Positions 1 to 53,366 of a stretch of DNA of 64,000 nt are shown piece by piece. Below the pieces are notes generated by a model. That model was not told the DNA's origin. It worked only from the letters and a program-made list of their open reading frames with translations, and searched no databases. Source of the stretch: Ophelia neglecta (lineage: Eukaryota). Within the stretch, counting starts at the first letter, position 1; each line of letters starts with the position of its first letter. The DNA lies in NCBI GenBank assembly GCA_965285935.1, contig OZ260666.1, positions 14,632,001 to 14,696,000 on the forward strand, written 5' to 3'. The position numbers and the translations under genes were made by a program.

Positions 1-444
1 AAAGATTTGGTTGAGAAGGGCGCAGATGTCAATTTCCCAGGATGTAAAGGCAAACCGTCATTAAACTGCGCAGCCAAAAATGGTCATTTAGATGTAATAC
101 GGTATCTTTTAGATAAAGGTGGTAATATAAAGGAGGTAAATGAATTTGGTCAAACTCCACTGGGTTCTGCTGCAGAAAAAGGACAAATAGGAGCAATGCG
201 AGTTTTTCTTGATAAAGGCGCCGACCTAAATCATCCTGGAAGTTCTGGTCAACCCCCACTTCACTGCGCAGCAAAGAAAGGGAAGCTAGACGCTATACAT
301 CTGCTTTTGGACAAAGGCGCCGATGTGACCATTAAAAATAAATTGGGACTTACTTCAGTTGAAGTAGCTGCAAATGTAGGTCACTCAGAATGCGTTGAAT
401 GTGTCGTTGACAAAGGAAGTACTATTCCTCACGCTGCCAACTAG
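1..444 (+). pseudogene. 3' end of an ankyrin-repeat array, upstream copy of the second ankyrin array of gene C; 5' part lies outside the window
   Basis: 33-aa ANK repeats (KPSLNCAAKNGHLDVIRYLLDKGG, QPPLHCAAKKGKLDAIHLLLDKGAD). Nearly identical to 38391-38834. Coding status cannot be settled here, because the counterpart lies downstream of a stop and a frameshift. Confidence 0.7.
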
Positions 445-7400: not shown

Positions 7401-8293
7401 ATATACGTAGTCCCTTTGTTCGAACAGTCAGAGGAGTCGGCAAATCTTGGCATTCTGTTTCCTGGGTCTTGGTCCAGTTTTTTTGGTGTTAGTACTGAAA
7501 AATGTACCATAGGGGAACTTTCCAATGTATGTTTACATTGTGTCTGATATTTGGATCCTTCATCAGTAGTATTAGGACAAGTGGTCTTTGCCGCTACCGA
7601 TTTTACCGCTGTGCTTTGCTGCCCATTGGTGTCCATGGAACCATCTTCAGGACCCAAGGAGCCCTTATCTTGGTCCACACCCCTCAATGCCTCCTTTGAA
7701 TACTCTCGCCTTTCCGATGAATTGATGACAAGAGTATTAGAAACCAGTCCGTCATACCTTCCTATCAATCCACTCTTTTCGTTTGACGGGTTTTCTTTGG
7801 ATCGAAGGTAGTTCTTCGGATCGTCCGATGATATAAGCCCAAGTTCCGAGATGTCAGTGTTTTCTACTTCAGCGTCCTTTCGCCCTTTGCAAGGGTCATT
7901 GGTGGTTTTCACATAAGTTTGTTCTTGGCGATCAGTGTACGCTTCATGACTACTATGTACTACGGGTCTTGGGTTGCTTACTTTGCAGAGGAGAGCAGAT
8001 GATTCCTCTTCATTTGTACAATCCTCAGGCCAACTGTTTTCTACGGGAATTTTGTTGCCCACTGTTTGTAGAGTAGGCGTAATGTTTGTTTGAGGGAATG
8101 GACCATATACAACAGTAGGTCTTTCAGCGAATACATCATACTCCTGCTCGTTTAAGATGGTCGGTGACAGTTTATCTTCAACTCTGCCTTTCTTAATGCT
8201 CATGGGTACCACTTGGTCTTCTAAAGGTGTTGGGGTTCCCGGTCGTATGCGACCTACAAGGTCTGGCAAGGAAAAACGATTCACTTTATCCAT
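4401..8293 (-). CDS. Gene B1: putative type II TM Ig-superfamily protein, ~590 aa (cytoplasmic tail, TM, stalk, 1 Ig plus half Ig, stop)
   Basis: Exons complement(8293..7042, 5336..5256, 5060..4746, 4525..4401), all GT-AG phase 1, 1773 nt in total. Start MDKVNRF is inferred. Single TM FGFIITSTLAGLVFIGVILFTL is preceded by basic residues. Ig motif FTLINVTLQDAGVYTC. The last exon stops at WYENGD*. Confidence 0.75.
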
Positions 8294-9280
8294 TTTATCG
8301 AGGGATATTTTTCTGCATAAACTAAGAAGACGTTTTCTATCTGCATTAGCAGCACAACAATAACCCGTCTGACTCACCTACTGCTCATATCGAGATATAC
8401 AATGTCAAATAAGTATGATATCCTTAACCATTTTGGTAGCATTTATTGTGTCATTTTGGTAACTGATGTAAATATATTAATTCTTGGGTTTCTCCAAAGC
8501 GTCGGCGCAACTTTTGCGATAAGCCGACACATTTGGATATAAATTATATATTTTCACCAGGCCATCATACCAAGGTTGACTCAATCCCCCGCCATTCTAG
8601 AAGAGATAACAGAATGCGTAATTATTGATAATAATTGAGCAAAATATGTGTCAACATAATAGCTAATGGGCCACACAGAAACTAATGGCCAGGTCACTGC
8701 GAACGTATGGGGTCCGACATTTTTTCGAATAACATTCTGTTTAAGTTCTAGTCGGAGTCTAGCATAGTTAGTGTTGACCTATAAATGTTCTCGTAATCTC
8801 GCAATTAGGGAGGATAGTCAAGGATGTCGGAAAAGATAGTTGGGCATGTTCAAAGAAATGTTTACTGGAGCTCCCGAATGTGACTACTGGTCCCTTCTGG
8901 AAGCTTTGGAGTTGTATTCCAGGAAAAAGCGGTTTGTAGGGAAAGGCTTATGAATCATAATGAACATATTCACTTTTAGCCAAAGTCACTGTACGTCGAA
9001 CAGAGTAATTATCTTAGAACATAGTAATTATCTCTATCGCATTATGTAGCTATGTTAAGATTAATGGACGTTTGTAGGTAAGATCTGTCAGTATTATACC
9101 CCCTTAGTATTACGATAGTAAAGCTATATGAGATAATATCTATTCGTATGGTGAATAAATTGCAATAATAAGGAGCATCCAGGCACGCGTGGCGATGTCA
9201 TGTCGTTTGTAGCACAACACGCTCTTCTAGCACTTAAAAGTTCAGATAGTGTCAAAGTACACATGTGTCGCCTACTCAGT

Positions 9281-10280: not shown

Positions 10281-13200
10281 ATGATGGCTCGCATGCATTT
10301 AACCTATGCGTTGGTGCACTTGCACCTGCTTGTTACATTGATCAAAGGTTAGTTAATTTCCATAGTTTCGACTTAGTTACCACATATGTCCTGCACCTCA
10401 GCTTGTTGAGCTTCTTTTCTTCCTCGTCGCTTAACATTGATCAAAGGTTAGTTAATTTCCATAGTTTCGACTTAGTTACCAAATATGTCCTGCACCTCAG
10501 CTTGTTGAGCTTCTTTTCTTCCTCGTCGAAAACAATTTTTTCTGCAGCTAAGTAGTAAAGGATTAGGTAAATTATTAGGATTCAAAAGACCAACTGCGCT
10601 CCTTTCGTTGCAGATATGTTCACTTATGAATGTTCATTGTATGACTCATTTTTGTCGATTGGTGTAGCACAACTTGAAGATGGGCTTCCTATGATATATG
10701 TTTGTGACCTATTTTGTGGGTGTAATCCCCGAGGTACTAATAAAAGAAATGTACGCCTTCCCATCTCGAAATATTGACACAAGGGTTCCGCCTGGCCTTC
10801 TCTTTCGCGGCCATAATATATTTTTGACGAAAATCGATATTCTGCATAACCCTTTGATTCTTCATGCCAATATAAAAAAATAGGGTCATTTTATGTCTCT
10901 GTATAAGGTCTAGTTCAAAAGTTATGTGTTTAACTGATATCGCTATGTCTGCGGAGTGTCCACTCCCTTTGTTTCAAACAACTTTTGTACCTAATAATAC
11001 TTCACCTGTGGACTTATACTCAATTCTAAGTTTAGGTTTTAATGAATTTGTATTATATTGAAGCCGGGACACAAATCTCACGCACCATCCATGTTTGCGA
11101 AGGCGACACAATGAAGGTCAGCTTTGATTACCCGCATGGAAGGATGGGGGAAGCTACCTCGGTGCATGTAGAGCAGATAAAACCTATAAGCAGATACATT
11201 ATATATCAAGATTGGAATGAAAAGCCAACACCTGATGATGAGAGGGCGTGGATAGTTTGGAGAAAGACAAGCACTGGTGAACAAATCGAGGTAGGAATAA
11301 ACCACATAACTCTGTCTGATGAGGGGAGTTACGTTATTGATGTTTACTCGGATGGCTATGTGGAAACATATATTTTCTCAGTAAAGGTTTTGAACAACTC
11401 TGGTGAGTAGTTTTTTAATCTAGTTTCTGCTTTTATCTAGAATAAAATATAATAATTAATAACATCTCTCCCCACTTTCCCATATTTATATACATATATA
11501 AATACCATTCTACATCCATTTGGATGAATATTTTAATAAATATTTTTTCAATATTATTTTGTCAGTTAAATCAAATTCCAATTTTGTTGCACACTTTATC
11601 ACACTCAGTCTGCCCTGACCCTAAGAACTTGAGGCATCCGACAATCTCCTACAGACAGAAACCATCCTCTATAATACGTTTATACAACAAAACGTTGGAG
11701 CTCCGTGAACCAAGCAATGTTACACTGTTAGTGGACATACCTGCAGGGCATCCTCCTGTAATATGTACAATAGCCACAGATAAGTCTCAACATACTTGCA
11801 ATGGAAAGGTCAACATGACTTTCCTGTGTGAGGCTGAGCTCTTCTTGATATCGTCGGAACAGGAAATAAGAATAACCTTACATTTTATTGCTTACCGACC
11901 AATGACTACTAAGTTAGTTGCATTCGTCCTGGGTAAGGTTAATATTTGCATTAATAAATTTCTATATAAGATTATAAGGATTGATGGTACATTTTTACAT
12001 AGATAACGTGATAGACAAACGTGCCGCTTTAAACGACAAAGACTGGGGTGGAACTAATAACATAACACCATTGAAGATGCTACATGAAATCATATATTGT
12101 AATTAACAGAACATGATCTTCTGGAAGGCACGGAAATCAGCAAAATAAAAAATGAACATGATAAACCATCACCAGCAGTATATACTGCACGGGAGACCAA
12201 GGCAGCTCAAATGACCATTGATAGCGTTCTTGTGCTTGGGGGTTTTGTTTGCTTGTTCCTTGTCATCGCCCTTACGGCAGGAGCTCTGGTGGCACACCAT
12301 AGATGGAGAAAAGAGAGAGAACAAACCAGTGTGGATCGATTCGAACCTCCACGTACCGCGGCACAGGAAGAGGTACACCCCTGTCTCACCTTTCATACGA
12401 CATTCAAATGATACTTCTACTGTTCTTAGGAACATTGTAGTATTAATTCAACACCTTAGTATTAGTTGATAAATCATTTGCAATTCACTTCCACGATTGA
12501 ATTCATCGCCAAAAAAGCATCCTATGAACTATTTGATAGTGTTGTCCAAATAGTTTTTTTATTAAGGTTTAGTTTAGTAATGAATCATCAAAATCCATAT
12601 TTCTGTGTTGAAACATGCATAAGCATACATTCAATTCAGCCTGTCGTATCTCAGACAACGTTTTACCTTGTTTTCTTTTCACCACATGTTTACCTTCTGT
12701 ATTTGGTTAGATCGAAGAACGCCAGAATCTAGTCACTAATGACATGGACAAGCCAATCGCCTCAGCAGGTGATTGTTCCGTTTCTCAAATCATGGGTTCT
12801 GTAGACTTTAATACGGTACGAATCAGACTCCACAAGTTTCTGTTTATTCATTCTTCTACCATTAAAATAGTCTTCACGCCTGCTTTTATCATGAAATCTT
12901 AAAACTTGGTAATTATAATTTGTTCTCCTATTTCCGTCTTCTTCATGTCATAGATCTTGCCAAATGAAGGATTTTCTCCTCTACACATCGCAGCTATGGC
13001 CGGAACTGTTGATGAAGTAAAGCGCCACTGTAGGGATGGTGCTGACCTAAGTGAGCTTGACCCAATGAGTCGGACTGCACTGGCTGCAGCTGCTCGCAAT
13101 GGACATATATCTATTGTGCAATTTCTCATTGAGAAAGGCGCTGATGTCAATCACCCGGGCCCAGATGGTTTTCCCCCGGTAGCCAGCGCGGCAATTAAAG

Positions 13201-13928
13201 GTCAGACAGATGTAATCACTGTGCTATGTGAAAATGGCGCTGATCTCCGAATCATGGATAAAACTGGAGAAACTGCATTACACTACCCCTCCATTAAAGG
13301 AAATGTCAAGCTTATCAGCTTACTTTTGAGCAGAGGAGCTGATTTGCAAATATTGAATAAGCATGGACAAACACCACTGGGTTCTGCCTCAGAAGAGGGT
13401 CAGTTGTTAGCTGTAAAGTATCTCATTGATAAAGGTGCCGATATCAACAGGCCAGGCTGCAGTGGCAAACCCCCATTACACTGTGCCGCCAGGAACGGGC
13501 ATATAGCAGTCATACACTATCTTTTAGATAACGGCTGTGATATACACGCTTTAGATGACCTAAGTCAAGCCCCGCTTGGAGCCGCAGCTGGCAAAGGTTT
13601 AGTCGAAATAATGCGAAGTCTCATTGGTAAAGGAGCAAGTGTAAACCACCCTGGAATGTCTGGTCAACCTCCATTACACTGCGCAGCCGCGAAAGGACAA
13701 CTAGGGGCGATACACCTTCTCATAGAAAAAGGCGCAGATGTCCACATGAAAAATAAATTTGGCCAAACGGCAGTGGAAGTTGCTGCCAGTAAAGGTTTTA
13801 TTCCATGCGTGGAAGGTCTCATTGACAAAGGGGCTGCTGTTCCCCAGCCGGAAGTTGCTAGCCAGACAGACATACTAACCACTGTTGTGTTATTGGGGGA
13901 TTGTACTGCTGTTTGGAAGAATCATTAG
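10281..13928 (+). CDS. Gene A1: type I TM receptor, signal peptide - 2 Ig-like domains - TM - 9 ankyrin repeats, ~690 aa
   Basis: Exons 10281..10347 (MMARMHLTYALVHLHLLVTLIK), 11064..11402 (V-like, ITLSDEGSY), 11609..11932, 12110..12372 (TM VLVLGGFVCLFLVIALTAGALV), 12711..12815 (phase 0/0, possibly a cassette exon) and 12954..13928 (9 ANK). Phases are 1,1,1,0,0; 2073 nt; no internal stop. Confidence 0.85.
10335..10528. repeat. Local tandem duplication (~95-bp unit, 99-bp period) including the signal-peptide exon donor
   Basis: ACATTGATCAAAGGTTAGTT...TCCTCGTCG occurs at 10335-10429 and 10434-10528. There is a single unit at ~49918-50010 in copy 2. Confidence 0.9.
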
Positions 13929-16900
13929 AAGGAAAGGATGTCATATTATGATAATTGTGTGAACATCTAACTGAAATGCCTATCCAGGAGAGGACCAATT
14001 CCAGGAGGGGACCACTTGAGACTCAAACAACCATCCTATGAAAATAAAGGAATCAATGTGATATGTTTGTGAGGGCTTCAGTATACAATTTTTGGTTCCC
14101 TAACCAAATCGGGGGAAGTTTGTTTAGTCAAAAAAAAACTAGTACGTTTGTGGAGCCAGTCGCTAAACGGTTTGCACCGCATTCAATCCCCACTGGCTGA
14201 TGTAAAATCCTTACCACGCCTGTGACCACCAAATGCGAATACTTGATTAAATCTTCTAAATTGACAGACAAATATTAGTGTATTAACCTAAAATGTTAAG
14301 CCTCATGTTGAAGGCAGTTACCAGAAACACGATTTGAGCATATTTCCTATATTGTCCAATAAGTACTCAGACCGCAGGCCGGGGGAATATTATATGAGGA
14401 CAAAAGTAAACTGTAGAGGCTATACAGGCTTTTTTACCCTAGTAAGACGACCATTTTTGACAACGATTTTGTGTGCTCTGTATGCTGGATATCCGCTACT
14501 GTCTGTTCTTAATATTTTAACAACTTTTTTGAAATGGGAATCGATTAGGACTAATCAGGCCAACGACGATGATTCTTCCTTTTATTACTTCAGACCGACG
14601 AACAGTTATGCCAATGTATAACTTTGAAAGGCAGCAGGATGTTGTCTTGTAATAATCGGATCAAGTTATCTAAAATAAAACCTATTTAGTCACGTACCTT
14701 ACTGTTTCCTTTTTTCACATCGACATTATTCAATAATCAATTGTAGCATTATATAAACAGTACTAATTCGTTGTATATATTTTGATCAAGTACAAGCTAT
14801 GGCGCATAGATAATATGGCCTGCTTAATACAACAATGAAGAGAAGCATAATAATATATGTGTTCTTTATCTTGTGCAGCAGTTCATGTCAAATGGTATGA
14901 AGAAGTAAATGGCTGGCCTCATGTAGGATATGGCACTATGGCATTGATATTAGTTTAACCAAATATGCACACATACATGGACACAATTGTACAAACCAAG
15001 CGGATTAAAAAACCCCGAAAACTACGTAAACTTACAACGCGAATTAAACCCGCATTGTGCCATCTGCATTTTAGTATCAATTAAAAAAAATCTGTAATAG
15101 TTTAATGTCTGTAAGTTGTGTTGATTGAGTAGTAACATTTACCACCAAAAGCAAACTGCTATCAACATCATATCGTGCCTAGTACAAAGCATACATTACA
15201 TAGTTGTTTCCATGGCCATCATCTAAATTGACAAAAAAATTATACAATTCTGCATATAGCAGAACACATATATTTAGTTTTCATTCATATTTATTCACGA
15301 ATGGGTTATTCAATGGTTATATGTTATGGGTGATACAAGATCATTGCTTAAGTTCAAGGAAAAATAAACTTTTGTCACGAATCTTACCAGTTTAGATATT
15401 GTTGTCTTCAAATGGTATGCGTAATCACGATTGTACTGCCAACAACTCGCGCACTGTAACGACATTACAGAGCACAAAAGGTTTTCTTGAACGTAATTAT
15501 GTCATATAAAAAGTAAAATCATTCAATTAAGTTAGGTGGTATTGCCGCTTAGGTGGTATAAGAGCAAGTGGCAGGCGTTGGAAAATTACACAATATTTCT
15601 TACTAATATCCCTGAGCAGTAAAGATACCCAACCATCATTGGCGGTGAATAACATACCTACACACACTGGGACAACACTACCAAAGTGGACTGGTCGCAT
15701 AAGAGTGCTTTCTATGTATAAATATACCCAACAGTCAAAGGAATGTAATATGACATGTATACGACACTGTTACATTATTACTTTACCAATGTGGATTTTT
15801 CGGATGAGTCTATTTTCTTAAACTGAGAGCAGTGCTTTCAATACATATGCCAGATACGTCTGGGAATGTGGCCCATAGTCTTCATGGCATCATTCTGCCA
15901 CATATAAACTATTGTTTTGTCAAGCCATAGTAGCACCCGTCAGATTCTTTATCAGAACACGGTGGAGCAATCATTTCATCAAAAAATTAAACCGCTCTCA
16001 CTTATACATGTAATCCGATATTTGAGGTTTGTCTCCTTGACTTATTTGTTGCTGCCAGGAATAAGGCGTATATTTTCTCTTCAACGGAGGATATGCTATA
16101 AACCTCTAATTATTAAAATGTAGTAATATTGTAATATGAAAAAAAATAATTATGATAAATTAATAATTCCGTTAAGCAACGAAAAGTGAAAAGTAATTAA
16201 GAAGCTACGTGTTCGAGAAAGTGCCTAGCATTAACTGACAAATCAGTCCTCAAATCGGAAATTGTGTTTTTTGGATAAAATGCCACGTCGTATGAAATAG
16301 TAAAAGCGATTATGAGACCTACTGTGCCTGTAAATGCATCTTGTAAATAGATATATGCAATGCTCAGAAACATATTTTGTGCGTTTAAAACGGACATCAG
16401 CATTTTAACAAACTTCATGTACGAGTCGGAAGAAATATCCTACTGTAAATAATGTCGAATATACTGGTGTGTTCTTTTGTTTCACTTCCCCTTGTTTAGA
16501 ACTCCGTATATCGTATATCCTTGTAATTTATATACAACAACGTACAAGGATGTCCAAATCACATATCCAAAGTATGCTGCTAGTGTTAAATATCCACAAT
16601 CAAATATTTCGAGCCGTCTCCCCTAAAGTTGAGCAGTTTCCAAAAGAAAACAAGCAGTGACGTAGGTATATTATAAAATAATAGTGCTGAATGTGGAGAA
16701 TGGCTATTAACATACTACTTACATACAGGGCAAACAGTACCCAAATGCGCTGCCCTGCGACATAACAATACAATTACCCTTTTACGATCAATAAGACCAA
16801 CCGCTCACTGTGCACTCAGTAATAAATCTAAACAATCAGCGCCGTGCTTAATACGGGTTATACCCAGTCCCCATACCATCACGTTTTACTATAAATGAAC

Positions 16901-24600: not shown

Positions 24601-24837
24601 CATCCAGTCGTCTGTCGTCAGGCTAGCTGAGTCCGAGGACCCTGTGGTGGAGCCATCGACCCTGTCAATTTCATCCCCAGCGTTGCTATATCCTGTATTA
24701 ATTCGTAGATGATCCTGGCATTGTACGCTAGGCTCGGCTCCTGTTTGTTTTGGACTGGTTTCAAGGTCGTCGGTTTGGTGATTAGGACTCGAGTGGTCAC
24801 CTTTGCATGGCGACGCAGACTTTTCCAACGCATCCAT
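18629..24837 (-). CDS. Gene D1: putative type II TM protein with a ~720-aa repetitive tail and 4 Ig domains; in-frame TAG in Ig3 (truncated or null allele)
   Basis: Exons complement(24837..22593, 21933..21859, 20895..20596, 20340..20026, 19743..19471, 19246..18944, 18708..18629), all phase 1, 3591 nt. TM YIATAALVGVVVVVVLTWIL. Many N-x-S/T sequons C-terminal to the TM. TAG at 19600-19598. The terminal exon is the least certain. Confidence 0.78.
23530..24660 (-). repeat. Coding repeats in the D tail: 4x DxRxDYFHFxxVPRS and 3x STGSSDxxSLTTD
   Basis: Read directly from the translation. Higher-order period of about 200 aa (~600 nt). Confidence 0.9.
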
Positions 24838-30000: not shown

Positions 30001-31868
30001 ACCGTAAACGTTATCAATTAAGGAAATTGTAATCCCCTTCGTCATAATCATGACAAATCTCTTCCACTTTCTTTTTCATTTGCATATTATTTTCCTGAAC
30101 ACTGAAAATGAGGTAAATCTCCAAGTTTGAATCTATCTGGCCCATTGATATGGCATATTACAATGATAATCAATAATCAAGTATAATCAATTATTTAGCT
30201 CTAATACCGTCTAATAGAACCGTCAGTTGCAAGCATTAACATCACTCTTCAGTTCTCTAGCTAAGTGATCAATATATACATTTGGCTTTCCCAGGGTGAT
30301 AGGTCACATGCATCGGTTGTATACTGATATAGCAGTGCATGCTGTAGATTCAGGCTTTCAGTAATACAAAATGACACTGATTCATTTTAGAGATTAAACT
30401 TTATATTTCAGAGTGATGGAGATTTAATGTCCTGAATTTCGTTGGAATTCGATGACCTTTTATATCGGTCTTATTTTTCAAGACTAATCCATTTGTATGC
30501 TCACATTTAAGACAAAGATTTAACTACGATACCCTCTCCCAGGAAATACCTTAAACTGTCTTACGTATCTGTAGACCATTATTAGCGCACCTATTCAGGT
30601 TGTGAAAACCCTATCACGAAGGACGGGCACCTTGGACCATTGTATTGACCAAACACTACAAGTTAAGCGTGTCCATTATTATGTCATCTAAAAAGAAACC
30701 ACATGTATAACTGTACTATTGATTTGGCATTGACCGATGTGTCATAGAAAAAAAGATCTGTCACTCACTTGTGGGTATTAAGTTTAAGAAGGAATTGCTT
30801 AAATATATATCAAGAGGATTGATTGGCAGAAAATATAAGCAAGGGGTCTAATGATGGCCTTTTATTTGATCTTAACGTCAATATCTGATTCCAATTGGGG
30901 AGATTAATCATCCGATGCTGAAATGATGTACCGAATGCATATTGTTAAATCACATCCCTAATTTTCCTTATTGACTTGTGTCATAGTGTCTTATATATAA
31001 TAATCTCTTCGGTAAAAAAAAATTATCTATTTCCCTTAAAAATACTTCCAAATGTTTAATTTCTGTAAAATTAAGATTACACTGTGACACCCATTGTCCT
31101 GCTCAGTACAGTAAAAAACAATTCTTAATTACATTTAACGATAGCAATATAAATTAATTTTCTATTTCCTTTCCAAAATAATGTGCCAAAGCCAATATAC
31201 GAAAATAAACTGCCCTCGTGTAAAGCCTGGCCTAAAGATTTTTTTAAAGGAATTAAGCAAACAGAACTGTCATCCCTCATTTATTTTGTTTAAAAAGGGT
31301 CTGGAAACACCATTTTATATTAAAATCAGATTATAAAATTGATGTGCCTCACTGTCTTGAGAATATTTGGGAAAAAAATTCTGGTTCATCGATTTGGCGC
31401 TTCCGAGTTGGCAATTCGGGTTTACTTGTTCATCCTCTACTACATTTTTATGTACACAACTACGTCATAAGGAAACGTTTAAATTAAAAGTCATAGTAAG
31501 CAGTTGGCAGGTTTGCTTTTGCTTACATTTTCTCGTGTGTGTACCACCTGTACGAATCACTAATTTCTGATCTTCCTAATCAATAATATTGCATTTTCAG
31601 ATAATCAACGTGTCATATTTCTCATATAGTAATATTTTTCATCAGTTGTACGACGTAGCTCTGAACGCTCGGCAACATATAAAATAATGCCTGTTTTCCT
31701 TTATATAACAAATTACAGATTCCTTGAGAGAATTAAATTGGCAGAGGTGACGTTAGCAAGCTAGCAAACATGAAACTTATATCATGTGTATTATCTATGG
31801 TGTTGGTTCATTCCCACACAGGCGTTGCAATTGACGGTAAGAATATGCTCCTTCTTGAGATTTCTGAA

Positions 31869-32076
31869 NNNNNNNNNNNNNNNNNNNNNNNNNNNNNNNN
31901 NNNNNNNNNNNNNNNNNNNNNNNNNNNNNNNNNNNNNNNNNNNNNNNNNNNNNNNNNNNNNNNNNNNNNNNNNNNNNNNNNNNNNNNNNNNNNNNNNNNN
32001 NNNNNNNNNNNNNNNNNNNNNNNNNNNNNNNNNNNNNNNNNNNNNNNNNNNNNNNNNNNNNNNNNNNNNNNNNNNN
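31869..32076. other. Assembly gap (208 N) in intron 1 of gene C
   Basis: Run of N. Confidence 1.
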
Positions 32077-32577
32077 AAACCTTCTCATTTCATCAAGGTT
32101 TTTGCACGCAACTTGACCATTTGATCTCCATTATTTATCAACACTTGTTTTGTTTACAGTAAGACGCCCTGGCCCTGTGTCTGTCTGTGAGGGTGATGAA
32201 GCCAAATTCCAGGTGGATTTCCATCCAGGAATGATGGACACATTAAAGTCGGTACACGTTGAACAGGTCTCGCCGAAGGCAAGATACATCCTATATAAGA
32301 ACCGGAACGAAAAAACACACTTGGATGAGCCAAGGGCCTGGCTTGCCTGGAAAAAGATAAGCAATGGAGATCAACTTGAATTCCTCATTCGAAACATAAC
32401 TGTATTGGACGATGGTATCTATGAAATATATGTATATTGGGGAACAAAAGTGATGGAAATAAGTGCCATAGTGAATGTGTTTGGTTAGTCCTCGAGAACA
32501 ATTACAAAACACTTTATTGAGTTACAATAATTAATCAATCTAACGATCCATCTTTATATATATATATATATATCATC

Positions 32578-32703
32578 AATTCTTTTGTCACTTTCAACGA
32601 ATTGTATAATTGGGGTAATTATATATATATATATATATATAATTACATAATTACCCCAATAATTTCCCCAATTATACCATTAGTTGAAAGTGACAAAAGA
32701 ATT
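32578..32703. repeat. AT-centred inverted repeat (hairpin or cruciform)
   Basis: AATTCTTTTGTCACTTTCAAC ... GTTGAAAGTGACAAAAGAATT are exact reverse complements. Inner arms TATAATTGGGG / CCCCAATTATA surround an (AT)n run. Confidence 0.85.
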
Positions 32704-34763
32704 AATGAAACCAAAGAATCATAATGTAATACATTGAGTCACACTCACACTATATTTGTTTTCCTCATGTTTTAAAATCTGGCATGGAATCGGTGTAAAT
32801 TCGAAGTTTAGTCAATTTATTAAAGAATGTTAAGGCGCTATATGTTATCGCACAGATAGTATTCACCTATTGCTGGATATGGATTTTGTACTGATACTAT
32901 TAGAAATGCTATAACAATGCTTGGAATGGATCTAACATGTATTAGACACTAGGCGAGACCGGCGTACCAGCAATGAGAAGGGAATACATGTATCTCAGTA
33001 CGTTTTGAGAAGAGGGAAAATTACGATGATTGAGACAACCATAATTTCAGTGATAAATGGGTCAAACTACCTTTTCTTCTAGAAAGATTATATTTTAGTT
33101 TATATATATTAAATTGTTTGGCTAACCTTAACTACCATATGCGAATTTGCTCAACGTCACATGTTAGTAACCGGATTGTGGTTAAAATGAAGATATTTTA
33201 CATCGTTGGGGTTGGTTGAGGATGGATATTGAATGTCTAATAATGCCCGGCACCATTGGTTCCACTTTTCTATTATTTCATAATATTAAACATAAAAAGG
33301 CATCTTCGATCTGTGCCTACTGCTTGTATAGGCGAATGATATAATTATCTTCTGGACATGGTTTGCGACACAATAGACCTAAAATAGGACATATTAAGTA
33401 TATACCATGCATGTCAATGAAATGTCTCCATTGAATACACCGAATTCATGTTATGTAATCAATTCGTTATCCATGTTTTGTAGGCTGCCCTGACAGAGAA
33501 TGGCTGATGTACCCTCCAATCTCCTATGGATAAAACACATCCGCATTCACCAGTGTATACAATGACGGCCTGGAAGTCAAACCAGGTAATGTGATCCTCC
33601 GGGTGGATATACCGGCAGCCAATCCGCCAGTCTTCTGCACCGTGTCCACCGTGTCAACAGCACAGCCTCACTGCATGGGACTGCCAGACATAACTTGTAC
33701 CTTGTCCAATGGCAAGGCACATTATCACTGCAGAGGAACAACACATATGACATATATGTGTGAAGTGGATCTTCAGTTTGATGTTGCCAGGGAGGACCAG
33801 ACTATAAACGTGAGCCTGTCATTTATCGCATATGGAGCAAAGACAACCCAACTACGTGTCCACGTCAAAGGTTAGTTAGGTCGTATAAGAATCGTGTGGC
33901 GTTTTATAGCCCTAGGCTGAAAGAATAACTATGAAAAGGAAACTCTCTGACATTTGTATTTTGCACTATTAATAGTCAAACTATTGGAAGTGTGTATGCC
34001 ATATTCATATTGCAACTTGTATTCACGTTACTTAGCATACCTAGTGTTCTTTTCATACAGGCACATTCATAAGATCATTTAATGCTTTTCGTTCATCAGA
34101 GGAAATTATAGAAGAAGTGACGACAACCATCGTATCTGGACAAGAGCATCCCAAAAGCACAAAATCAACGCCGGCAACTGTAATTACCATTGTTGTTTTA
34201 GTTACACTGGCAATAATTGGTGTTTTAGCCGCGGTGTCATACTATCAGCTAAGACAACAAAAAGAGGAAAACACCAACCGAACAGATGTAGAGGTAACAA
34301 CATACATTATGATGGCTTGCTTTTGATCAAATTTAAAAGTCCTAATAAACAAAGAGTTCGACTAATGTTTCATTTCAAATATGATATAATAAATAAAGGA
34401 AAGAAATAAAGTAAAAAGAAACGGGAGTTGATACCCGGCAGAGAAAGCAAAATTATTAATTCATTAAATCGGTAGAAAATCAGCGGGAACCGACTGCAAT
34501 TACAAATCAATCTAGGGCCTACACTTTGAGTACTGCCATATTTGAACTTTTTATAAGTGTATTTTAAGACAGGAAATGACCTACCTGGTGCCATGTGCCG
34601 ATAAACGCTAAAAATATAAATCCTACCAATAGAAACACTCACATTATACGAACAAAATAGTTGCATTATTTCGACATGGGCATTATGATGCCTACGGCAA
34701 ACGTTTTCAACAGATAATGATTCGTTTTAAGGACCACAATAATGTACTTTTGTTCTCTCATAG

Positions 34764-35404
34764 GGTAAAGCAACCGAGCCACTTGTTCCTTCTGTGCAAA
34801 GTACAATTAGGACCCCAACGGAATTTTTTTTTCTTCTCTGCACATTGCGGCTTTTAATGGTGATTTGGCTGAGAAATGAGAAATGGCCTTGATTTACAAC
34901 TGTTAGACAAAACGGGTCGGACGCCATTGGTTGCTTATGCTCGAGAAGGTTATATGAGTATTGTCCGGTATCTCATTGAAAAGGGTGCTGATGTCAATTA
35001 CTCAGGTATTGGAGGATACCCATCCTTATCTGGGGAAGCCATTAAGGGCCACTTGGATGTAATAGAAATATTATGCGAAAATGGCGCTGATCTACAAACA
35101 CCAAATAGTAATGGAGAAACAGCTTTACACTACCCTGCCATGAAAGGAGATATAAAGACAATGCGGGTTCTTTTGAATGGAAGAAATGCTGATATTCAAA
35201 TTCTGAATGAACGCGTACAAACGCCGCTTGTTACTTCTTAAGTTGCTGTCACACTTTAGCGTATAGAGCTAACGTGTGTCTGGCGTATTGAAAAATTGGG
35301 TGTACGTTCGCGTAAGTTGCCATTCGTTCGTGACACGTTTGACATAAGGTCTTTGGCAGCGGTTAAATCGCTCAGTGACCACGGTGCCAATGTGGACCGG
35401 CCAG
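34764..35404 (+). pseudogene. Decayed duplicate of the gene C ankyrin exon (cassette 1)
   Basis: The acceptor and ~130 bp of upstream intron are homologous to those before 36943. Begins GKATEPLVPSV, frameshifts in a T run and stops at TGA 34890-34892. ANK homology continues in ORF 34876-35241, is interrupted by an ~105-bp insert, and resumes at 35348-35404. Confidence 0.85.
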
Positions 35405-36103
35405 TATTTGCTATATCGCCTTCAGTCTGGTATGACGGACGATACTGCGTATAAAACTTGTTACTGCGTAATATGCGCTGGTGTCACACGTGCTGCTGCT
35501 GTGAAATGTTATCTTCAAGTTAACACAACATTCAGACAGCTAACTTGCTATAATGGTTAGATTTTGTTGGTTATTTGGAACCGGACACAACAATAATGTT
35601 TTATGCCTTAGCCCCCAGGGGCAAGGTAGCTGTTCAGTGGGCAGGCTTTACTTGGCACCCGCCTTCCCTTGCGCTGATTAACAAATACAATGTAATGCTC
35701 CTTCTAATGCAGTGATTAACTGTAGTCTCCAACCATCCCCACTCCTTGGACTTGATTGGTTGGTTGTTTGTGGTTTTTCGTGACTTTCAACACTTATATG
35801 GCCATATCGCCACGTTGCCTACTTGAGGCAGTGGGCTCATTGCCCTCTTCGTGGATTTATTTCAGTAAATACCAGACCAAAGATGTTGCTAGAATGATGC
35901 GTTCCACTTTAAGAATTAAGCGACATTCGATTCCAAACTGTTAGAATTACAAAACAATCAAATGCCTTAACACTTTGCATTGTCACATTTTAAGCTTTCT
36001 TTTATCAGCTTCATGCCAATGAAAATAATAATGTTGTACGAAGCATATTCTCATTCTTTTCGTTTCAAGTCGCACACTAATATTTTCTTACGTTTTCTCC
36101 TAG

Positions 36104-36610: not shown

Positions 36611-37908
36611 TAGACATGCCATACTAGAAAGGCATAATCAGAATCAGAAATATCTCTATTTTGGCCATTCACGAATATATACATACAATAAACGATCACA
36701 ATAAGCTTTACAGACATGAAATGAACAGGGTGACCCTCACTAGGGCTGCTGTGCTGCCGCTAGCGTGGGGGCCACCTTCTATATAATAGAAAGTCATTAT
36801 CCAACCAAAGGAAACACTCATATTATACTAACAAAGTGGCTGCATTATTTCGAAATGAGCATGATAATGACTACTGTAAACGTTTCAAACAGATAATGTT
36901 TCGTTTCGAGCACCATAATAATGTATTTTTCTTCGCTCATAGGGTGCAGCAACCGAGCCACTTGTTCCTTCTGTGGACAAAACTATTAGGACCCCAGCGC
37001 AAGATTTTTCTCCTCTTCACATTGCGGCTTTGAACAATGATTTGAATGAGGTAAAGCGTCTGTGTAAAAATGGCGCTGAACTAGAAGTATTAGACAAAAT
37101 GGGTCGTACGCCACTCGGTGCCTCTGCTCGCGAAGGTCATACGTGTATTGTCCGGTATCTAATTGAGGAAGGTGCTGATGTCAATTACTCAGGATCCGGA
37201 GGTTACCCAGCCTTATCTGGGGCGGCCATCAAGGGCCACTTGGATATAATAGAACTATTGTGCGAAAATGGCGCTGAGCTTCACACAACAGATAGTAATG
37301 GAGAAACAGCTTTACACTACCCAGCCATGAAAGGAGACATAGAGACAATGCGGGTGCTGTTGAGTAGAAATGCTGATATTCAAATTCTAAATGAACACGG
37401 ACAAACGCCGCTTGCTATTGCTTCAGAAAAAGGTCATTTGCCAGCTGTTAAATGGCTAATTCGCCAAGGTGCCAATGTAGACCGGCCAGGCAGTGAAGGC
37501 AAGCCCCCGTTACACTGCGCGGCTGGGAAAGGACGCACGGAAGTTATAGAATGTCTCTTGGATCACGACGCAAACATACATACAGTAAATAAATTCGGCC
37601 AATCACCGCTTGGATCTGCTGCTGAGAAAGAGCAAATAGAGACAATGATAAACCTCATCCAGAGAGGCGCCAGTGTTAACCATCCGGAAGAAAACGGCCA
37701 ACCTCCTCTCCACTGTGCAGTATATAAGGAGGAACAGCTGAAGTCACTGCGGCTTCTCTTGGACAAAGGTGCAAACGAGGTCATGAGAAATAAAAACGGT
37801 CTTACTCCAGTTGATGTCGCCCGTAAAAATGGACATTTGCAAGCAGTTGAATGGTTAATCGACAAAGGTGCTTCTGAAAAACAGAGCAAGGCAAGCACTC
37901 AGTGTTAA

Positions 37909-38834
37909 AGCAAAGAGGAATCGAATGAGTCCAGCCCAGCGCTAGTATCCATTTCTTTGAATGAAGCAGCCTCAGCCGGAAATTTAGATGAATTGAAGCG
38001 TCTAATCAACCATGTGCTTATCCACTTCCACTTGATGAAATATGTCGGACCACACTTAATGATTCTGCTCGCAATGGACATACCAGTATTGTCAAGTTCC
38101 TCATCGAGAAGGGCGCTGATGTCAATTACATAGGATCTGATGGATTTCCTCCGTTACCTGGAGCTGCTATAAAAGGGCAACTGGATGTAATAAAATTACT
38201 TTGTAGAAATAGAGCGAGTCTACGAAACATTGACAAAAGTGGCCAAACTCCATTACATTATCCAGCACTTAAAGGAAACATAGAGGCAATGCAGACTTTT
38301 CTGGACGAAGGTGCTGACAAAGAAATACTAAATAAACAGAGAGAAACGCCACTTGGCGTCGCATCTGGTAAAGGTCAACTATTGTTTGTAAAAGATTTGG
38401 TTGAGAAGGGCGCAGATGTCAATTTCCCAGGATGTAAAGGCAAACCGTCCTTAAACTGCGCAGCCAAAAATGGTCATTTAGATGTTATACGGTATCTTTT
38501 AGATAAAGGTGGTAATATAAAGGAGGTAAATGAATTTGGTCAAACTCCACTGGGTTCTGCTGCAGGAAAAGGACAAATAGGAGCAATGCGAGTTTTTCTT
38601 GATAAAGGCGCCGACCTAAATCATCCTGGAAGTTCTGGTCAACCCCCACTTCACTGCGCAGCAAAGGAAGGGCAGCTAGACGCTATACATCTGCTTCTGG
38701 ACAAAGGCGCCGATGTGACCATAAAAAATAAATTGGGACTTACTTCAGTTGAAGTAGCTGCAAATGAAGGTCACTCAGAATGCGTTGAATGTGTCGTTGA
38801 CAAAGGAAGTACCATTCCTCACGCTGCCAACTAG
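37909..38834 (+). pseudogene. Second 9-repeat ankyrin array directly after the gene C stop codon
   Basis: In frame after TAA 37906-37908 it reads SKEESNESSPALVSISLNEAASAGNLDELKRLINH. A 1-nt deletion follows near 38014, then a frame open from 37992 to 38834 holds the remaining repeats. Confidence 0.8.
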
Positions 38835-49863: not shown

Positions 49864-52800
49864 ATGATGGCTCGCATGCATTTAACCTATGCGTTGGTGC
49901 ACTTGCACCTGCTTGTTACATTGATCAAAGGTTAGTCAATTTCCATAGTTTCTACTTTACCACATATGTCCTGCACCTCAGTTTGTTGAGCTACTTATCT
50001 TCCTCATCGAAAACAATTTTTTCTAGTAAGGGATTAGGTAAATTATTAGGATTCAAAAGGGAGACCAACTGCGCTCTTTTCGTTGCAGTTTGTCGATTGG
50101 TGTAGCACAACTTGAAGATGGGCTTCCTATGATTTATGTTTGTAACCTATTTTGTGGGTGTAATCCCCGAGGTACCAATAAAAGAAATGTACGCCTTCCC
50201 ATCTCGAAATATTGACACAAGGATTCCGCCTGGCCTCCTCTTTCGCGGCCATAATTTATTTTTGACGAAAATCGATATTCTGCCTAACCCTTTGATTCCT
50301 CATGCCAATATAAAAAAATAGGGTCATTTTATGTCTCTGTATAAGGTCTAGTTAAAAAGTTATGTGTATAACGGATATCGCTATGTCTGCGGAGTGTCCA
50401 CTCCCTTTGTTTCAAACAACTTTTGTACCTAATAATACTTCACCTATGGACTTATACTCAATTCTAAGTTTAGGTTTTAATGAATTTGTATTATATTGAA
50501 GCCGGGACACAAATCTCACGCACCATCCATGTTTGCGAAGGCGACACAATGAAGGTCAGCTTTGATTACCCGCATGGAAGGATGGGGGAAGCTACCTCGG
50601 TGCATGTAGAGCAGATAAAACCTATAAGCAGATACATTATTTATCAAGATTGGAATGAAAAGCCAACACCTGATGATGAGAGGGCGTGGATAGTTTGGAG
50701 AAAGACAAGCACTGGTGAACAAATCGAGGTAGGAATAAACCACATAACTCTGTCTGATGAGGGGAGTTACGTTATTGATGTTTACTCGGATGGCTATGTG
50801 GAAACATATATTTTCTCAGTAAAGGTTTTGAACAACTCTGGTGAGTAGTTTTTTAATATAGTTTCTGCTTTTATCTAGAATAAAATATAATAATTAATAA
50901 CATCTCTCCCCCCTTTCCTATATTTATATACATATATAAATACCATTCTACATCCATTTGGATGAATATTTTAATAAATATTTATTCAATATTATTTTGT
51001 CAGTTAAATCAAATTCCAATTTTGTTGCACACTTTATCACACTCAGTCTGCCCTGACCCTAAGAACTTGAGGCATCCGACAATCTCCTACAGACAGAAAC
51101 CATCCTCTATAATACGTTTATACAACAAAACGTTGGAGCTCCGTGAACCAAGCAATGTTACACTGTTAGTGGACATACCTGCAGGGCATCCTCCTGTAAT
51201 ATGTACAATAGCCACAGATAAGTCTCAACATACTTGCAATGGAAAGGTCAACATGACTTTCCTGTGTGAGGCTGAGCTCTTCTTGATATCGTCGGAACAG
51301 GAAATAAGAATAACCTTACATTTTATTGCTTACCGACCAATGACTACTAAGTTAGTTGCATTCGTCCTGGGTAAGGTTAATATTTGCATTAATAAATTTC
51401 TATATAAGATTATAAGGATTGATGGTACATTTTTACATAGATAACGTGATAGACAAACGTGCCGCTTTAAACGACAAAGACTGGGGTGGAACTAATAACA
51501 TAACACCATTGAAGATGCTACATGAAATCATATATTGTAATTAACAGAACATGATCTTCTGGAAGGCACGGAAATCAGCAAAATAAAAAATGAACATGAT
51601 AAACCATCACCAGCAGTATATACTGCACGGGAGACCAAGGCAGCTCAAATGACCATTGATAGCGTTCTTGTGCTTGGGGGTTTTGTTTGCTTGTTCCTTG
51701 TCATCGCCCTTACGGCAGGAGCTCTGGTGGTAAACCATAGACGGAGAAAAGAGAGAGAACAAACCAGTGTGGATCGATTCGAACCTCCACGTACCGCGGC
51801 ACAGGAAGAGGTACACCCCTGTCTCACCTTTCATACGACATTCAAATGATACTTCTACTGTTCTTAGGAACATTGTAGTATTAATTCAACACCTTAGTAT
51901 TAGTTGATAAATCATTTGCAATTCACTTCCACGATTGAATTCATCGCCAAAAAAGCATCCTATGAACTATTTGATAGTGTTGTCCAAATAGTTTTTTTAT
52001 TAGGGTTTAGTTTAGTAATGAATCATCAAAATCCATATTTCTGTGTTGAAACATGCATAAGCATACATTCAATTCAGCCTGTCGTATCTCAGACAACGTT
52101 TTACCTTGTTTTCTTTTCACCACATGTTTACCTTCTGTATTTGGTTAGATCGAAGAATGCCAGAATCTAGTCACTAATGACACGGACAAGCCAATCGCCT
52201 CAGCAGGTGATTGTTCCGTTTCTCAAATCATGGGTTCTGTAGACTTTAATACGGTACGAATCAGACTCCACAAGTTTCTGTTTATTCATTCTTCTACCAT
52301 TAAAATAGTCTTCACGCCTGCTTTTATCATGAAATCTTAAAACTTGGTAATTATAATTTGTTCTCCTATTTCCGTCTTCTTCATGTCATAGATCTTGCCA
52401 AATGAAGGATTTTCTCCTCTACACATCGCAGCTATGGCCGGAACTGTTGATGAAGTAAAGCGCCACTGTAGGGATGGTGCTGACCTAAGTGAGCTTGACC
52501 CAATGAGTCGGACTGCACTGGCTGCAGCTGCTCGCAATGGACATATATCTATTGTGCAATTTCTCATTGAGAAAGGCGCTGATGTCAATCACCCGGGCCC
52601 AGATGGTTTTCCCCCGGTAGCCAGCGCGGCAATTAAAGGTCAGACAGATGTAATTACTGTGCTATGTGAAAATGGCGCTGATCTCCGAATCATGGATAAA
52701 ACTGGAGAAACTGCATTACACTACCCCTCCATTAAAGGAAATGTCAAGCTTATCAGCTTACTTTTGAGCAGAGGAGCTGATTTGCAAATATTGAATAAGC

Positions 52801-53366
52801 ATGGACAAACACCACTGGGTTCTGCCTCAGAAGAGGGTCAGTTGTTAGCTGTAAAGTATCTCATTGATAAAGGTGCCGATATCAACAGGCCAGGCTGCAG
52901 TGGCAAACCCCCATTACACTGTGCCGCCAGGAACGGGCATATAGCAGTCATACACTATCTTTTAGATAACGGCTGTGATATACACGCTTTAGATGACCTA
53001 AGTCAAGCCCCGCTTGGAGCCGCAGCTGGCAAAGGTTTAGTCGAAATAATGCGAAGTCTCATTGGTAAAGGAGCAAGTGTAAACCACCCTGGAATGTCTG
53101 GTCAACCTCCATTACACTGCGCAGCCGCGAAAGGACAACTAGGGGCGATACACCTTCTCATAGAAAAAGGCGCAGATGTCCACATGAAAAATAAATTTGG
53201 CCAAACGGCAGTGGAAGTTGCTGCCAGTAAAGGTTTTATTCCATGCGTGGAAGGTCTCATTGACAAAGGGGCTGCTGTTCCCCAGCCGGAAGTTGCTAGC
53301 CAGACAGACATACTAACCACTGTTGTGTTATTGGGGGATTGTACTGCTGTTTGGAAGAATCATTAG
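49864..53366 (+). CDS. Gene A2: copy of A1 (Ig-Ig-TM-ankyrin receptor), intact
   Basis: Exons 49864..49930, 50502..50840, 51047..51370, 51548..51810, 52149..52253 and 52392..53366. Splice sites are conserved with A1. Confidence 0.85.

What the first reader, a model, noticed from the sequence alone, without database searches (positions are those of the whole stretch)
10281..13928. Single-pass receptor coupling Ig-like ectodomains to a cytoplasmic ankyrin-only domain
Seen: phase-consistent splicing joins signal peptide, two Ig-like exons and TM to one intronless exon of nine ANK repeats, with no kinase, TIR or death domain. Established: Notch is the classic type I receptor with intracellular ANK repeats but uses EGF/LNR ectodomains, and IkB proteins use ANK repeats to bind Rel factors. 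Inference: an exon-shuffled receptor whose ANK domain is a scaffold, or is released by proteolysis. No WxP RAM motif is visible, so CSL binding is not predicted.
Basis: partly seen in the sequence, partly recalled or inferred. Interest (0 to 1): 0.82.

Follow-up and report, generated by a model that had tools for sequence, protein, structure and literature searches.

The report
Predicted Ig–membrane–ankyrin receptor gene
An unidentified, probably invertebrate, genome carries a gene model (two near-identical tandem copies plus an old decaying paralogue) for a single-pass surface protein with an antibody-like outer domain and nine ankyrin repeats inside the cell; I found no described or database protein with this combination, but no transcript shows the two halves are spliced together.

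Summary
The sequence-level observation holds. Six open segments at 10281-13928 (+) have canonical GT/AG sites and compatible phases (1,1-1,1-1,1-0,0-0,0). They encode a signal-like peptide, an IgV-fold domain (AF2 pLDDT 84; Foldseek CD96/CAR/nectin D1), a second all-beta 4-Cys domain whose fold I could not assign (not shown to be Ig), a strong TM helix with a basic stop-transfer, and one 975-nt exon of exactly nine 33-residue ANK repeats. No other domain is present.

The gene sits in a ~39.5 kb tandem duplication, so an almost identical copy lies at 49864-53366. An old paralogue (dS saturated) at 31770-37908 keeps the same order and phases but is damaged. A short contig from another organism (Logan ERR14113986) carries the two ectodomain exons with the same boundaries.

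Every ANK exon frame opens exactly at its acceptor (TAG|) with no early ATG, so it needs an upstream exon; the TM exon is the nearest in phase.

An exhaustive HMMER search with the IgV exon found one true relative and no ANK-bearing protein. No paper describing Ig-TM-ANK was found.

There is no transcript evidence, so the fusion is inferred (about 0.6). Function is speculative: recognition coupled to an ANK scaffold. It is not Notch- or IkB-like. Interest is moderate.

The parts
10281..10347 (+). Copy A exon 1: start codon and signal-peptide-like leader (22 codons + 1 nt, ends in phase 1)
   Evidence: Translation; donor AAG|gttagt. Same 67-nt length and LVHxH motif as exon 1 of paralogue P. 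Not run through a signal-peptide predictor.
11064..11402 (+). Copy A exon 2: IgV-fold domain (phase 1-1), one Cys only, DxGxY motif kept
   Evidence: V-set E=0.002, below threshold; pLDDT 84; CD96/CAR/nectin D1, TM 0.77. 42% identical to paralogue exon; 33% to P0127.
11609..11932 (+). Copy A exon 3: membrane-proximal all-beta domain with 4 Cys and 3 N-glycosylation sequons (phase 1-1); fold unassigned
   Evidence: Conserved in paralogue P and in L001.
12110..12372 (+). Copy A exon 4: stalk, transmembrane helix, basic stop-transfer and 26-residue juxtamembrane segment (phase 1-0)
   Evidence: KD19 2.64. Read-through of the donor would add 12 codons and then TGA.
12711..12815 (+). Copy A optional exon 5 (35 codons, phase 0-0); status uncertain, no counterpart in paralogue P
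   Evidence: Two nonsynonymous differences between copies A and B.
12954..13928 (+). Copy A exon 6: nine ANK repeats, a 22-residue tail and stop codon, no intron
   Evidence: Frame opens exactly at the acceptor (TAG|ATC); first in-frame ATG is codon 15.
14043..14048 (+). AATAAA, 115 nt after the stop: likely polyadenylation signal of copy A
   Evidence: No AATAAA between exon 4 and exon 6 of copy A.
49864..53366 (+). Copy B of the whole gene: e1 49864-49930, e2 50502-50840, e3 51047-51370, e4 51548-51810, e5 52149-52253, e6 52392-53366
   Evidence: e1, e2, e3 and e6 proteins are identical to copy A; e4 has 3 and e5 has 2 residue changes.
31770..34293 (+). Paralogue P, ectodomain and TM part: e1' 31770-31836, N gap 31869-32076 in intron 1, e2' 32160-32483, e3' 33484-33870 (in-frame TAA at 33531-33533), e4' TM 34100-34293
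   Evidence: AATAAA x4 at 34344-34405 just downstream of the TM exon.
34764..35230 (+). Paralogue P, first ANK exon: frameshifted and truncated (pseudo-exon)
   Evidence: 83% DNA identity to 36799-37414.
36943..37908 (+). Paralogue P, intact ANK exon (321 codons, phase 0, frame opens at TAG| acceptor)
   Evidence: Ank_2 E=5e-73; 55% identical to copy A.
38031..38834 (+). Further ANK block directly after P's stop codon, first repeats frameshifted; its duplicate is window 1-444

Best explanation
One gene, present as two near-identical tandem copies, encodes a type I membrane protein. It has a cleavable leader, an N-terminal IgV recognition domain, a glycosylated membrane-proximal beta domain, one TM helix, a short linker and a cytosolic solenoid of nine consensus-type ANK repeats.

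It was probably assembled by exon shuffling. Phase-1 ectodomain cassettes and a TM exon that ends in phase 0 were joined to a phase-0, intronless ANK cassette that is itself being copied around this locus.

Inferred mechanism: the IgV domain binds a ligand in cis or trans, as in CAR-, nectin- or CD96-type adhesion and recognition. This positions or clusters the ANK solenoid under the membrane, where it recruits cytosolic or membrane-protein partners as a scaffold.

The setting is a tandemly duplicating cluster of divergent IgSF membrane genes. That suggests a fast-evolving recognition role (immune, self/non-self or adhesion).

Shown here: exon anatomy, domain identities, duplication and paralogy. 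Inferred: the exon 4 to exon 6 splice, the topology and all of the function.
For: Exon anatomy and topology:
- Open frames, canonical sites and chained phases.
- IgV fold, a strong TM helix with positive-inside flank and nine ANK repeats.
- Four N-glycosylation sequons in the 219 ectodomain residues against none in the more than 380 cytoplasmic residues.

Linkage of the ANK exon to the TM exon:
- In all four ANK exons examined the frame opens exactly at the acceptor (TAG|). The first ATG lies inside repeat 1 (copy A) or repeat 2 (P), so the exon cannot start a protein naturally.
- The nearest upstream exon ending in phase 0 is the TM exon, 470-580 bp away, in both paralogues.
- There is no AATAAA between the TM and ANK exons in copy A, and there is one 115 nt after the stop.

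Conservation:
- Paralogue P diverged long ago (pS 0.65-0.79, saturated). It keeps the same order, strand, exon-1 length and phases.
- pN is well below pS in both ectodomain and ANK exons.
- The ectodomain exon pair, with identical boundaries, exists in another organism.
Against: - No transcript, EST or protein evidence of any kind was available.
- The exon 4 donor (GAG|gtacac) is not strong.
- Read-through of that donor gives a stop after 12 codons, so a short-tailed IgSF protein is possible.
- In paralogue P four AATAAA signals follow the TM exon directly, which is what a TM-terminated transcript would need.
- P is itself damaged: a stop in e3' and a broken first ANK exon. Its collinearity therefore shows ancestry, not current function.
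- Tandem duplication copies neighbouring genes together, so collinearity alone cannot prove one transcription unit.
- No Ig+ANK protein was recovered in any database search that could serve as precedent.
- The related contig L001 is too short to show a TM or ANK exon.
Confidence: 0.6

Rival explanations
1. These are two adjacent genes. One is a short-tailed IgSF type I membrane protein (exons 1-4, ending by read-through or an unseen small terminal exon). The other is an independent cytosolic ANK-only protein whose first coding exon lies between 12373 and 12953 (for instance starting at the ATG inside 'exon 5') or at Met15 of the ANK exon. The two were simply duplicated together.
For: - Read-through of exon 4 stops after 12 codons in A and B and after 10 in P.
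- P has four AATAAA signals 50-110 nt after its TM exon.
- Exon 5 contains an in-frame ATG and is open beyond its proposed donor.
- ANK blocks occur in the locus without an adjacent TM exon, at 38031-38834 and 1-444.
- No Ig+ANK protein was found anywhere.
Against: - Every ANK exon begins at an acceptor with a polypyrimidine tract and a stop codon immediately upstream. None has an ATG before the middle of repeat 1 or 2.
- Exon 5 has no counterpart in P, so a conserved private first exon is not visible.
- Copy A has no AATAAA between exons 4 and 6.
- The phase match (0/0) is kept in both old paralogues.
Confidence: 0.27
2. The locus is not a working gene. It is an unexpressed or decaying product of local duplication and exon scrambling, whose open frames persist only because copies A and B are young or homogenised by gene conversion.
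For: - Paralogue P carries an in-frame stop and broken ANK exons.
- ANK debris lies at 36155-36608.
- A and B are 99.5% or more identical across exons and introns alike, so they give no signal of selection.
- All five A/B coding differences in exons 4 and 5 are nonsynonymous.
- No relatives were found apart from one fragment.
Against: - About 690 codons across six exons are free of stops or frameshifts in both copies.
- pN is well below pS against P in every exon, which shows long-term coding constraint.
- The ectodomain module is conserved in a second organism with intact splice sites.
- A polyadenylation signal sits in the expected place.
Confidence: 0.1

Closest known systems
Notch receptors
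   Same: Type I single-pass protein with a block of ANK repeats as the main cytoplasmic module, close to the membrane.
   Different: - No EGF or LNR domains.
- No RAM WxP motif, NLS or PEST tail.
- Nine repeats rather than seven.
- The ANK sequence is of generic consensus type, with no Notch chain among the 60 best PDB matches.
- Cleavage and nuclear signalling are untested.
IgV-headed adhesion/recognition receptors (CAR/CXADR, nectins, CD96, CD226, MPZ)
   Same: N-terminal IgV domain with the same fold, type I topology, and a glycosylated ectodomain built from phase 1-1 exons.
   Different: - Those proteins have short tails with PDZ, ITIM or ITT motifs, not a folded ANK domain.
- The canonical B-F disulfide is absent here (one Cys only).
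- The second domain is not recognisably Ig.
L1-family IgCAMs bound to ankyrin (neurofascin, L1CAM with ankyrin-G/B)
   Same: An IgSF surface molecule is physically coupled to an ankyrin-type ANK solenoid under the membrane. The best structural-sequence matches of the ANK exon are the ankyrin-R/B membrane-binding domain.
   Different: - In that system the coupling is non-covalent, through a FIGQY tail motif. That motif is absent here; the ANK solenoid would be part of the same polypeptide.
- There are no spectrin-binding or death domains.
- The resemblance to ankyrin may only reflect consensus-like repeats.
Hydractinia Alr allorecognition gene family (PMC9546547)
   Same: A tandem cluster of divergent type I IgSF genes and pseudogenes in an invertebrate. 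Each has one domain per exon, a V-set-like first domain lacking canonical residues, a non-Ig membrane-proximal domain, and alternative or duplicated tail exons.
   Different: - Alr tails carry ITAM/ITIM motifs or are short; none is described with ANK repeats.
- No sequence relationship was detected in my searches.
- The source organism of this window is unknown.
Plant ANK-TM proteins (ACD6, Lr14a) and Kidins220/ARMS
   Same: Membrane proteins with cytosolic ANK repeats used in immunity or scaffolding (for the plant family).
   Different: Those are multi-pass proteins with the ANK repeats N-terminal and no extracellular Ig domain. They are unrelated in architecture.

Membership tests
Immunoglobulin superfamily, V-set | Two-sheet IgV beta-sandwich fold | tested here: met
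   Exon 2 AF2 model has pLDDT 84 and pTM 0.76. Foldseek against PDB gives at least 500 hits at E<=0.001, led by CD96, CAR and nectin-1 D1, with TM up to 0.77.
Immunoglobulin superfamily, V-set | Pfam V-set match above the curated threshold | tested here: not met
   18.7 bits against a cut-off of 26 (E=0.002) for copy A; 19.8 bits for paralogue P.
Immunoglobulin superfamily, V-set | Canonical B-strand to F-strand disulfide | tested here: not met
   There is a single Cys (C11) in exon 2 of A, P and L001. The position after the DxGxY motif is Ile, Ile and Ile/Lys, not Cys.
Immunoglobulin superfamily, V-set | DxGxY motif before strand F and conserved Trp in strand C | tested here: met
   D85-E-G-S-Y89 and W62/W65 are invariant between A and P. 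DEGTY and W are also present in P0127.
Immunoglobulin superfamily (second domain, exon 3) | Ig-like fold or sequence signature | tested here: inconclusive
   No Pfam hit. The AF2 model is all-beta but only pLDDT 66. Foldseek gives no hit at E<=0.001. hhalign against exon 2 gives probability 0.2%. The PDB profile search found nothing.
Ankyrin-repeat proteins | Tandem 33-residue ANK repeats above Pfam thresholds | tested here: met
   Ank_2 215 bits (cut-off 27.3) and Ank 172 bits. Nine repeats sit in an exact 33-residue register. Ankyrin-1/2 in PDB matches at E=1e-101.
Notch | EGF repeats and LNR modules in the ectodomain | tested here: not met
   No EGF or Notch/LNR Pfam hit in any exon.
Notch | RAM region with WxP motif between TM and ANK | tested here: not met
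   No W.P match in the 26-61 residues between TM and ANK.
Notch | Ligand-induced S2/S3 proteolysis and nuclear action of the ANK fragment | not testable with these tools
   Needs cell-based assays. No NLS-type basic cluster was found.
IkB | N-terminal DSGxxS degron, 6-7 ANK repeats and Rel binding | tested here: not met
   No DSGxxS motif, and nine repeats. No IkB chain among the 60 best PDB matches. Rel binding is not testable here.
Hydractinia Alr family | Sequence homology of the ectodomains, with ITAM/ITIM or short tails | tested here: inconclusive
   The exhaustive search with exon 2 found only P0127 as a true relative, but I cannot tell whether Alr proteins are in that library. There is no ITAM, and the single ITIM-pattern match lies inside an ANK repeat. 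The paper reports no ANK tails.

The most novel reading that the evidence does not exclude
The gene encodes a membrane-tethered ANK signalling module that arose independently of Notch. Ligand binding by the IgV domain triggers shedding and intramembrane cleavage, releasing the nine-repeat ANK domain to bind and regulate a cytosolic or nuclear factor (for example a Rel/NF-kB-type protein). That would be a convergent, lineage-specific Notch-like or membrane-bound-IkB-like pathway inside a fast-evolving recognition gene cluster.
Probability: 0.05. Interest if true: 0.85.

Novelty: new variant of a known kind. Interest (0 to 1): 0.48.

Why it matters
If the fusion is real, it adds a new cytoplasmic output module to the IgSF type I receptor repertoire. 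Instead of kinase, TIR, death or tyrosine-motif tails, it has a folded ANK solenoid. It would also be a concrete, datable example of receptor invention by exon shuffling, caught in a locus where the ANK cassette is still being copied and broken.

Together with the neighbouring divergent IgSF genes, it could mark a lineage-specific recognition locus of the kind that controls allorecognition or immunity in other invertebrates.

If it turns out to be two genes, the locus is an ordinary IgSF/ANK gene cluster.

Tried and rejected
- Word search with the ANK exon returned only generic ANK proteins at 40% identity or less. None had an Ig Pfam domain. Only proteins of 178-567 aa were visible, so a ~690 aa full-length relative could not have been seen.
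- Exhaustive HMMER search with the exon 2 profile gave 21 hits. Twenty are generic multi-V-set or unrelated proteins; none matches the ANK exon. One true relative was found (P0127).
- Word search with the exon 3 profile found nothing.
- Exact look-up of six window ORFs found none in the collection. The source genome therefore seems absent from the protein collection, and the organism stays unidentified.
- Word search with the 772-aa neighbouring ORF, run to identify the organism, found nothing.
- Rfam scan of the whole window found nothing.
- A literature search for the run accession found nothing.
- Literature searches for the architecture returned only plant ANK-TM proteins, Notch, TRP channels and the Hydractinia Alr paper.
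- Exon 3 fold assignment by Foldseek (PDB and BFVD), hhalign and a PDB profile search gave no assignment.
- The A-versus-B comparison as a test of selection was uninformative, because introns are as identical as exons.
- I considered that the 39.5 kb duplication might be a haplotig assembly artefact. I rejected this because the duplicated parts are the head of the stretch before the N gap and the tail of the stretch after it, not the two edges of the gap.
Everything was done exon by exon, by reference.
- The N run 31869-32076 was left as it is.
Full report
**What is in the sequence**

The window is eukaryotic DNA with about 38% G+C, short AT-rich introns and one N gap. On the + strand between 10281 and 13928 there are six open segments.

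| Exon | Coordinates | Length | Phase |
|---|---|---|---|
| e1 | 10281-10347 | 67 nt | ends in 1 |
| e2 | 11064-11402 | 339 nt | 1-1 |
| e3 | 11609-11932 | 324 nt | 1-1 |
| e4 | 12110-12372 | 263 nt | 1-0 |
| e5 | 12711-12815 | 105 nt | 0-0 |
| e6 | 12954-13928 | 975 nt | 0 to stop |

Each segment is bounded by AG and GT, and the phases chain. The frame is kept whether or not e5 is used. Exon G+C (0.42-0.48) is well above intron G+C (0.24-0.37).

**What the exons encode**

- **e1** gives a 22-residue leader with a basic start and a hydrophobic core. I judged it by eye only.
- **e2** has a sub-threshold Pfam V-set match (E=0.002, 18.7 bits against 26). It folds with good confidence (pLDDT 84) into an IgV sandwich. 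The best structural matches are CD96, CAR, nectin-1 and CD226 D1 (E about 1e-7, TM up to 0.77). It keeps the strand-C Trp and the DxGxY motif but has only one Cys, so the canonical disulfide is missing.
- **e3** is all-beta with four Cys and three N-glycosylation sequons, but I could not show that it is Ig-like.
  - It has no Pfam hit, and the model is of low confidence (pLDDT 66).
  - Foldseek finds nothing significant in PDB or BFVD.
  - It has no profile similarity to e2 and no PDB sequence match.
- **e4** holds a 37-residue stalk, the only strongly hydrophobic segment of the model (KD 2.64) and a HHRWRK stop-transfer.
- **e6** is nine ANK repeats in an exact 33-residue register plus a 22-residue tail.
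- No exon shows a kinase, TIR, death or other domain.
- The cytoplasmic part has no WxP, DSGxxS, ITAM, FIGQY, NPxY or basic NLS pattern.
- There are four sequons in the 219 ectodomain residues and none in the cytoplasmic part. This fits a type I topology.

- **A second copy.** Window 1-24308 and 38391-64000 are two copies of a ~39.5 kb tandem unit, 88-99% identical. A second copy of the gene therefore lies at 49864-53366.
  - Its e1, e2, e3 and e6 proteins are identical to copy A. There are three residue changes in e4 and two in e5.
  - Across 11403-13928 the copies are at least 99.5% identical in introns as well as exons, while the flanks differ by 2-6%. This looks like a conversion tract and gives no test of selection.
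- **An old paralogue, P, at 31770-37908.** It has the same plan.
  - It has a 67-nt leader exon and an IgV exon (42% identity).
  - It has an e3-like exon (46% over the part after an in-frame TAA at 33531-33533).
  - Its TM exon ends in phase 0, and phase-0 ANK exons follow.
  - Its first ANK exon (34764-35230) is frameshifted and truncated. ANK debris follows at 36155-36608. An intact ANK exon lies at 36943-37908 (55% identity), and another ANK block lies at 38031-38834, whose duplicate is window 1-444.
  - Synonymous differences between A and P are saturated (pS 0.65-0.79) while pN is 0.28-0.45 in every exon. The duplication is therefore old, and both halves evolved under coding constraint.

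**Is it one gene?**

*For one gene*
- In all four ANK exons examined the reading frame opens exactly at the acceptor (TAG|). The first ATG lies inside repeat 1 (A) or repeat 2 (P). These exons therefore look like internal or terminal exons that need an upstream coding exon.
- In both old paralogues the nearest exon ending in the right phase is the TM exon, 470-580 bp upstream.
- Copy A has no AATAAA between e4 and e6, and has one 115 nt after the stop.

*Against one gene*
- There is no transcript evidence.
- The e4 donor is only moderate.
- Read-through of that donor gives a stop after 12 codons.
- P has four AATAAA signals right after its TM exon.
- ANK blocks also occur without a TM exon.
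- Tandem duplication would carry two neighbouring genes together.

I put the single-gene model at about 0.6, two genes at about 0.27 and a non-functional locus at about 0.1.

**Relatives elsewhere**

- A profile of the two IgV exons was searched against 1.84 billion representative proteins. It gave 21 hits at E<=0.001.
- Twenty are generic multi-Ig or unrelated proteins, and none matches the ANK exon.
- The one true relative is P0127 (33% identity). It comes from a 1141-bp Logan contig of run ERR14113986 (L001).
- That contig also carries an e3-like exon 220 bp downstream (40% identity). It has the same acceptor and donor positions and the same first Cys. The IgV plus beta-domain module is therefore a real, conserved pair. 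The contig is too short to show what follows.
- Word searches with the ANK exon and the e3 profile added nothing.
- The window's own ORFs are not in the collection, and a neighbouring 772-aa ORF has no relatives. The organism remains unidentified. V-set exons in phase 1-1 point to a metazoan, most likely an invertebrate.
- The ANK word search could see only proteins of 178-567 aa, so its blank says nothing about full-length relatives of ~690 aa.

**Comparison with known systems**

- The ANK domain's best solved relatives are the ankyrin-R/B membrane-binding domain, DARPins, NOMPC, latrotoxins, TRPA1 and tankyrase. This is the generic consensus type. No Notch or IkB chain appears among the 60 best.
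- Because there are also no EGF/LNR domains, no RAM motif, no degron and no NLS, the protein is not a Notch or IkB family member.
- It resembles Notch only in being a type I protein with juxtamembrane ANK repeats.
- In its outer half it resembles IgV-headed adhesion receptors.
- In its genomic setting it resembles clusters such as the Hydractinia Alr complex (PMC9546547), whose members have ITAM/ITIM or short tails rather than ANK.
- Full-text searches found no description of an Ig-TM-ANK receptor. They returned only plant ANK-TM proteins, TRP channels and Notch.

**Verdict**

The anatomy is real and more than chance. The interpretation as one exon-shuffled receptor is the best reading but is unproven. 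The functional proposals are conjecture.

I rate it a new variant of a known kind: an IgSF type I receptor with an unusual cytoplasmic module. Interest is moderate (0.48). ANK is a very promiscuous domain, the family is lineage-restricted, and the key junction is unverified.

**Limits of the work**

- The N run was left untouched.
- Nothing in the window looked human.
- No step needed referral.

Noticed in passing
window 1-24308 and 38391-64000: Two copies of a ~39.5 kb tandem segmental duplication, 88-99% identical in blocks. The window spans about 1.6 units, so every gene in it (including the one in the finding) is present twice. The layout relative to the N gap does not fit a simple haplotig-overlap artefact.
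   Followed up: partly
window 11403-13928 vs 50841-53366: Within the duplication the gene body is at least 99.5% identical, introns included (introns 3-5: 0-1 differences). Upstream, intron 1 and downstream sequence differ by 2-6% with indels. This looks like a gene-conversion tract. All five coding differences in exons 4-5 change the residue.
   Followed up: partly
window 18753-20872, minus strand (duplicate at about 58441-60560): Exon-sized ORFs of another IgSF gene on the opposite strand. Two have weak V-set/ig Pfam hits and classic DAGxYxC motifs (20540-20872, 20000-20296). A third Cys-containing ORF (18753-19199) has no family. The locus is therefore a mixed cluster of divergent IgSF genes.
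   Followed up: partly
window 22531-24849 and 6980-8377, minus strand (duplicates at 62223-63983 and 46701-48140): Very long single ORFs (772 and 465 aa). They are Ser/Thr-rich, and the longer one has a motif DYFHFxxVPRSxM repeated four or five times. Each ends in a TM helix followed by a likely splice donor. They have no Pfam family and no relatives in the word search. It is unclear what they are or whether they belong with the Ig exons downstream.
   Followed up: partly
window 10335-10528: A 99-bp unit repeated exactly twice (98% identical). It starts 13 nt before the end of exon 1 and so duplicates the exon 1 donor site inside intron 1. Copy B differs in this intron by about 150 nt of indels.
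   Followed up: partly
window 32573-32708: A 50-nt inverted repeat (92% complementary) flanking a (TA)n run in intron 2 of paralogue P. It looks like a small MITE-type insertion.
   Followed up: no
window 34344-34405: Four AATAAA motifs lie within 60 nt, 50-110 nt after the TM exon of paralogue P. Copy A has none in the matching interval. P may make (or have made) a short-tailed, TM-terminated product.
   Followed up: no
window 38031-38834 and 1-444: An additional ANK block starts about 25-120 nt after the stop codon of P's intact ANK exon. Its first repeats are frameshifted but it is open for more than 260 codons. It is slightly closer to copy A's ANK exon (60%) than P's own exon is (55%). 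It could be a dead duplicate, an alternative terminal exon or a separate ANK gene.
   Followed up: partly
L001 1-1141 (Logan run ERR14113986): This is the only true outside relative of the ectodomain. It is a genomic contig from an unidentified organism with the IgV-like and e3-like exons in the same order, with the same phase 1-1 boundaries and a ~220-bp intron.
   Followed up: partly
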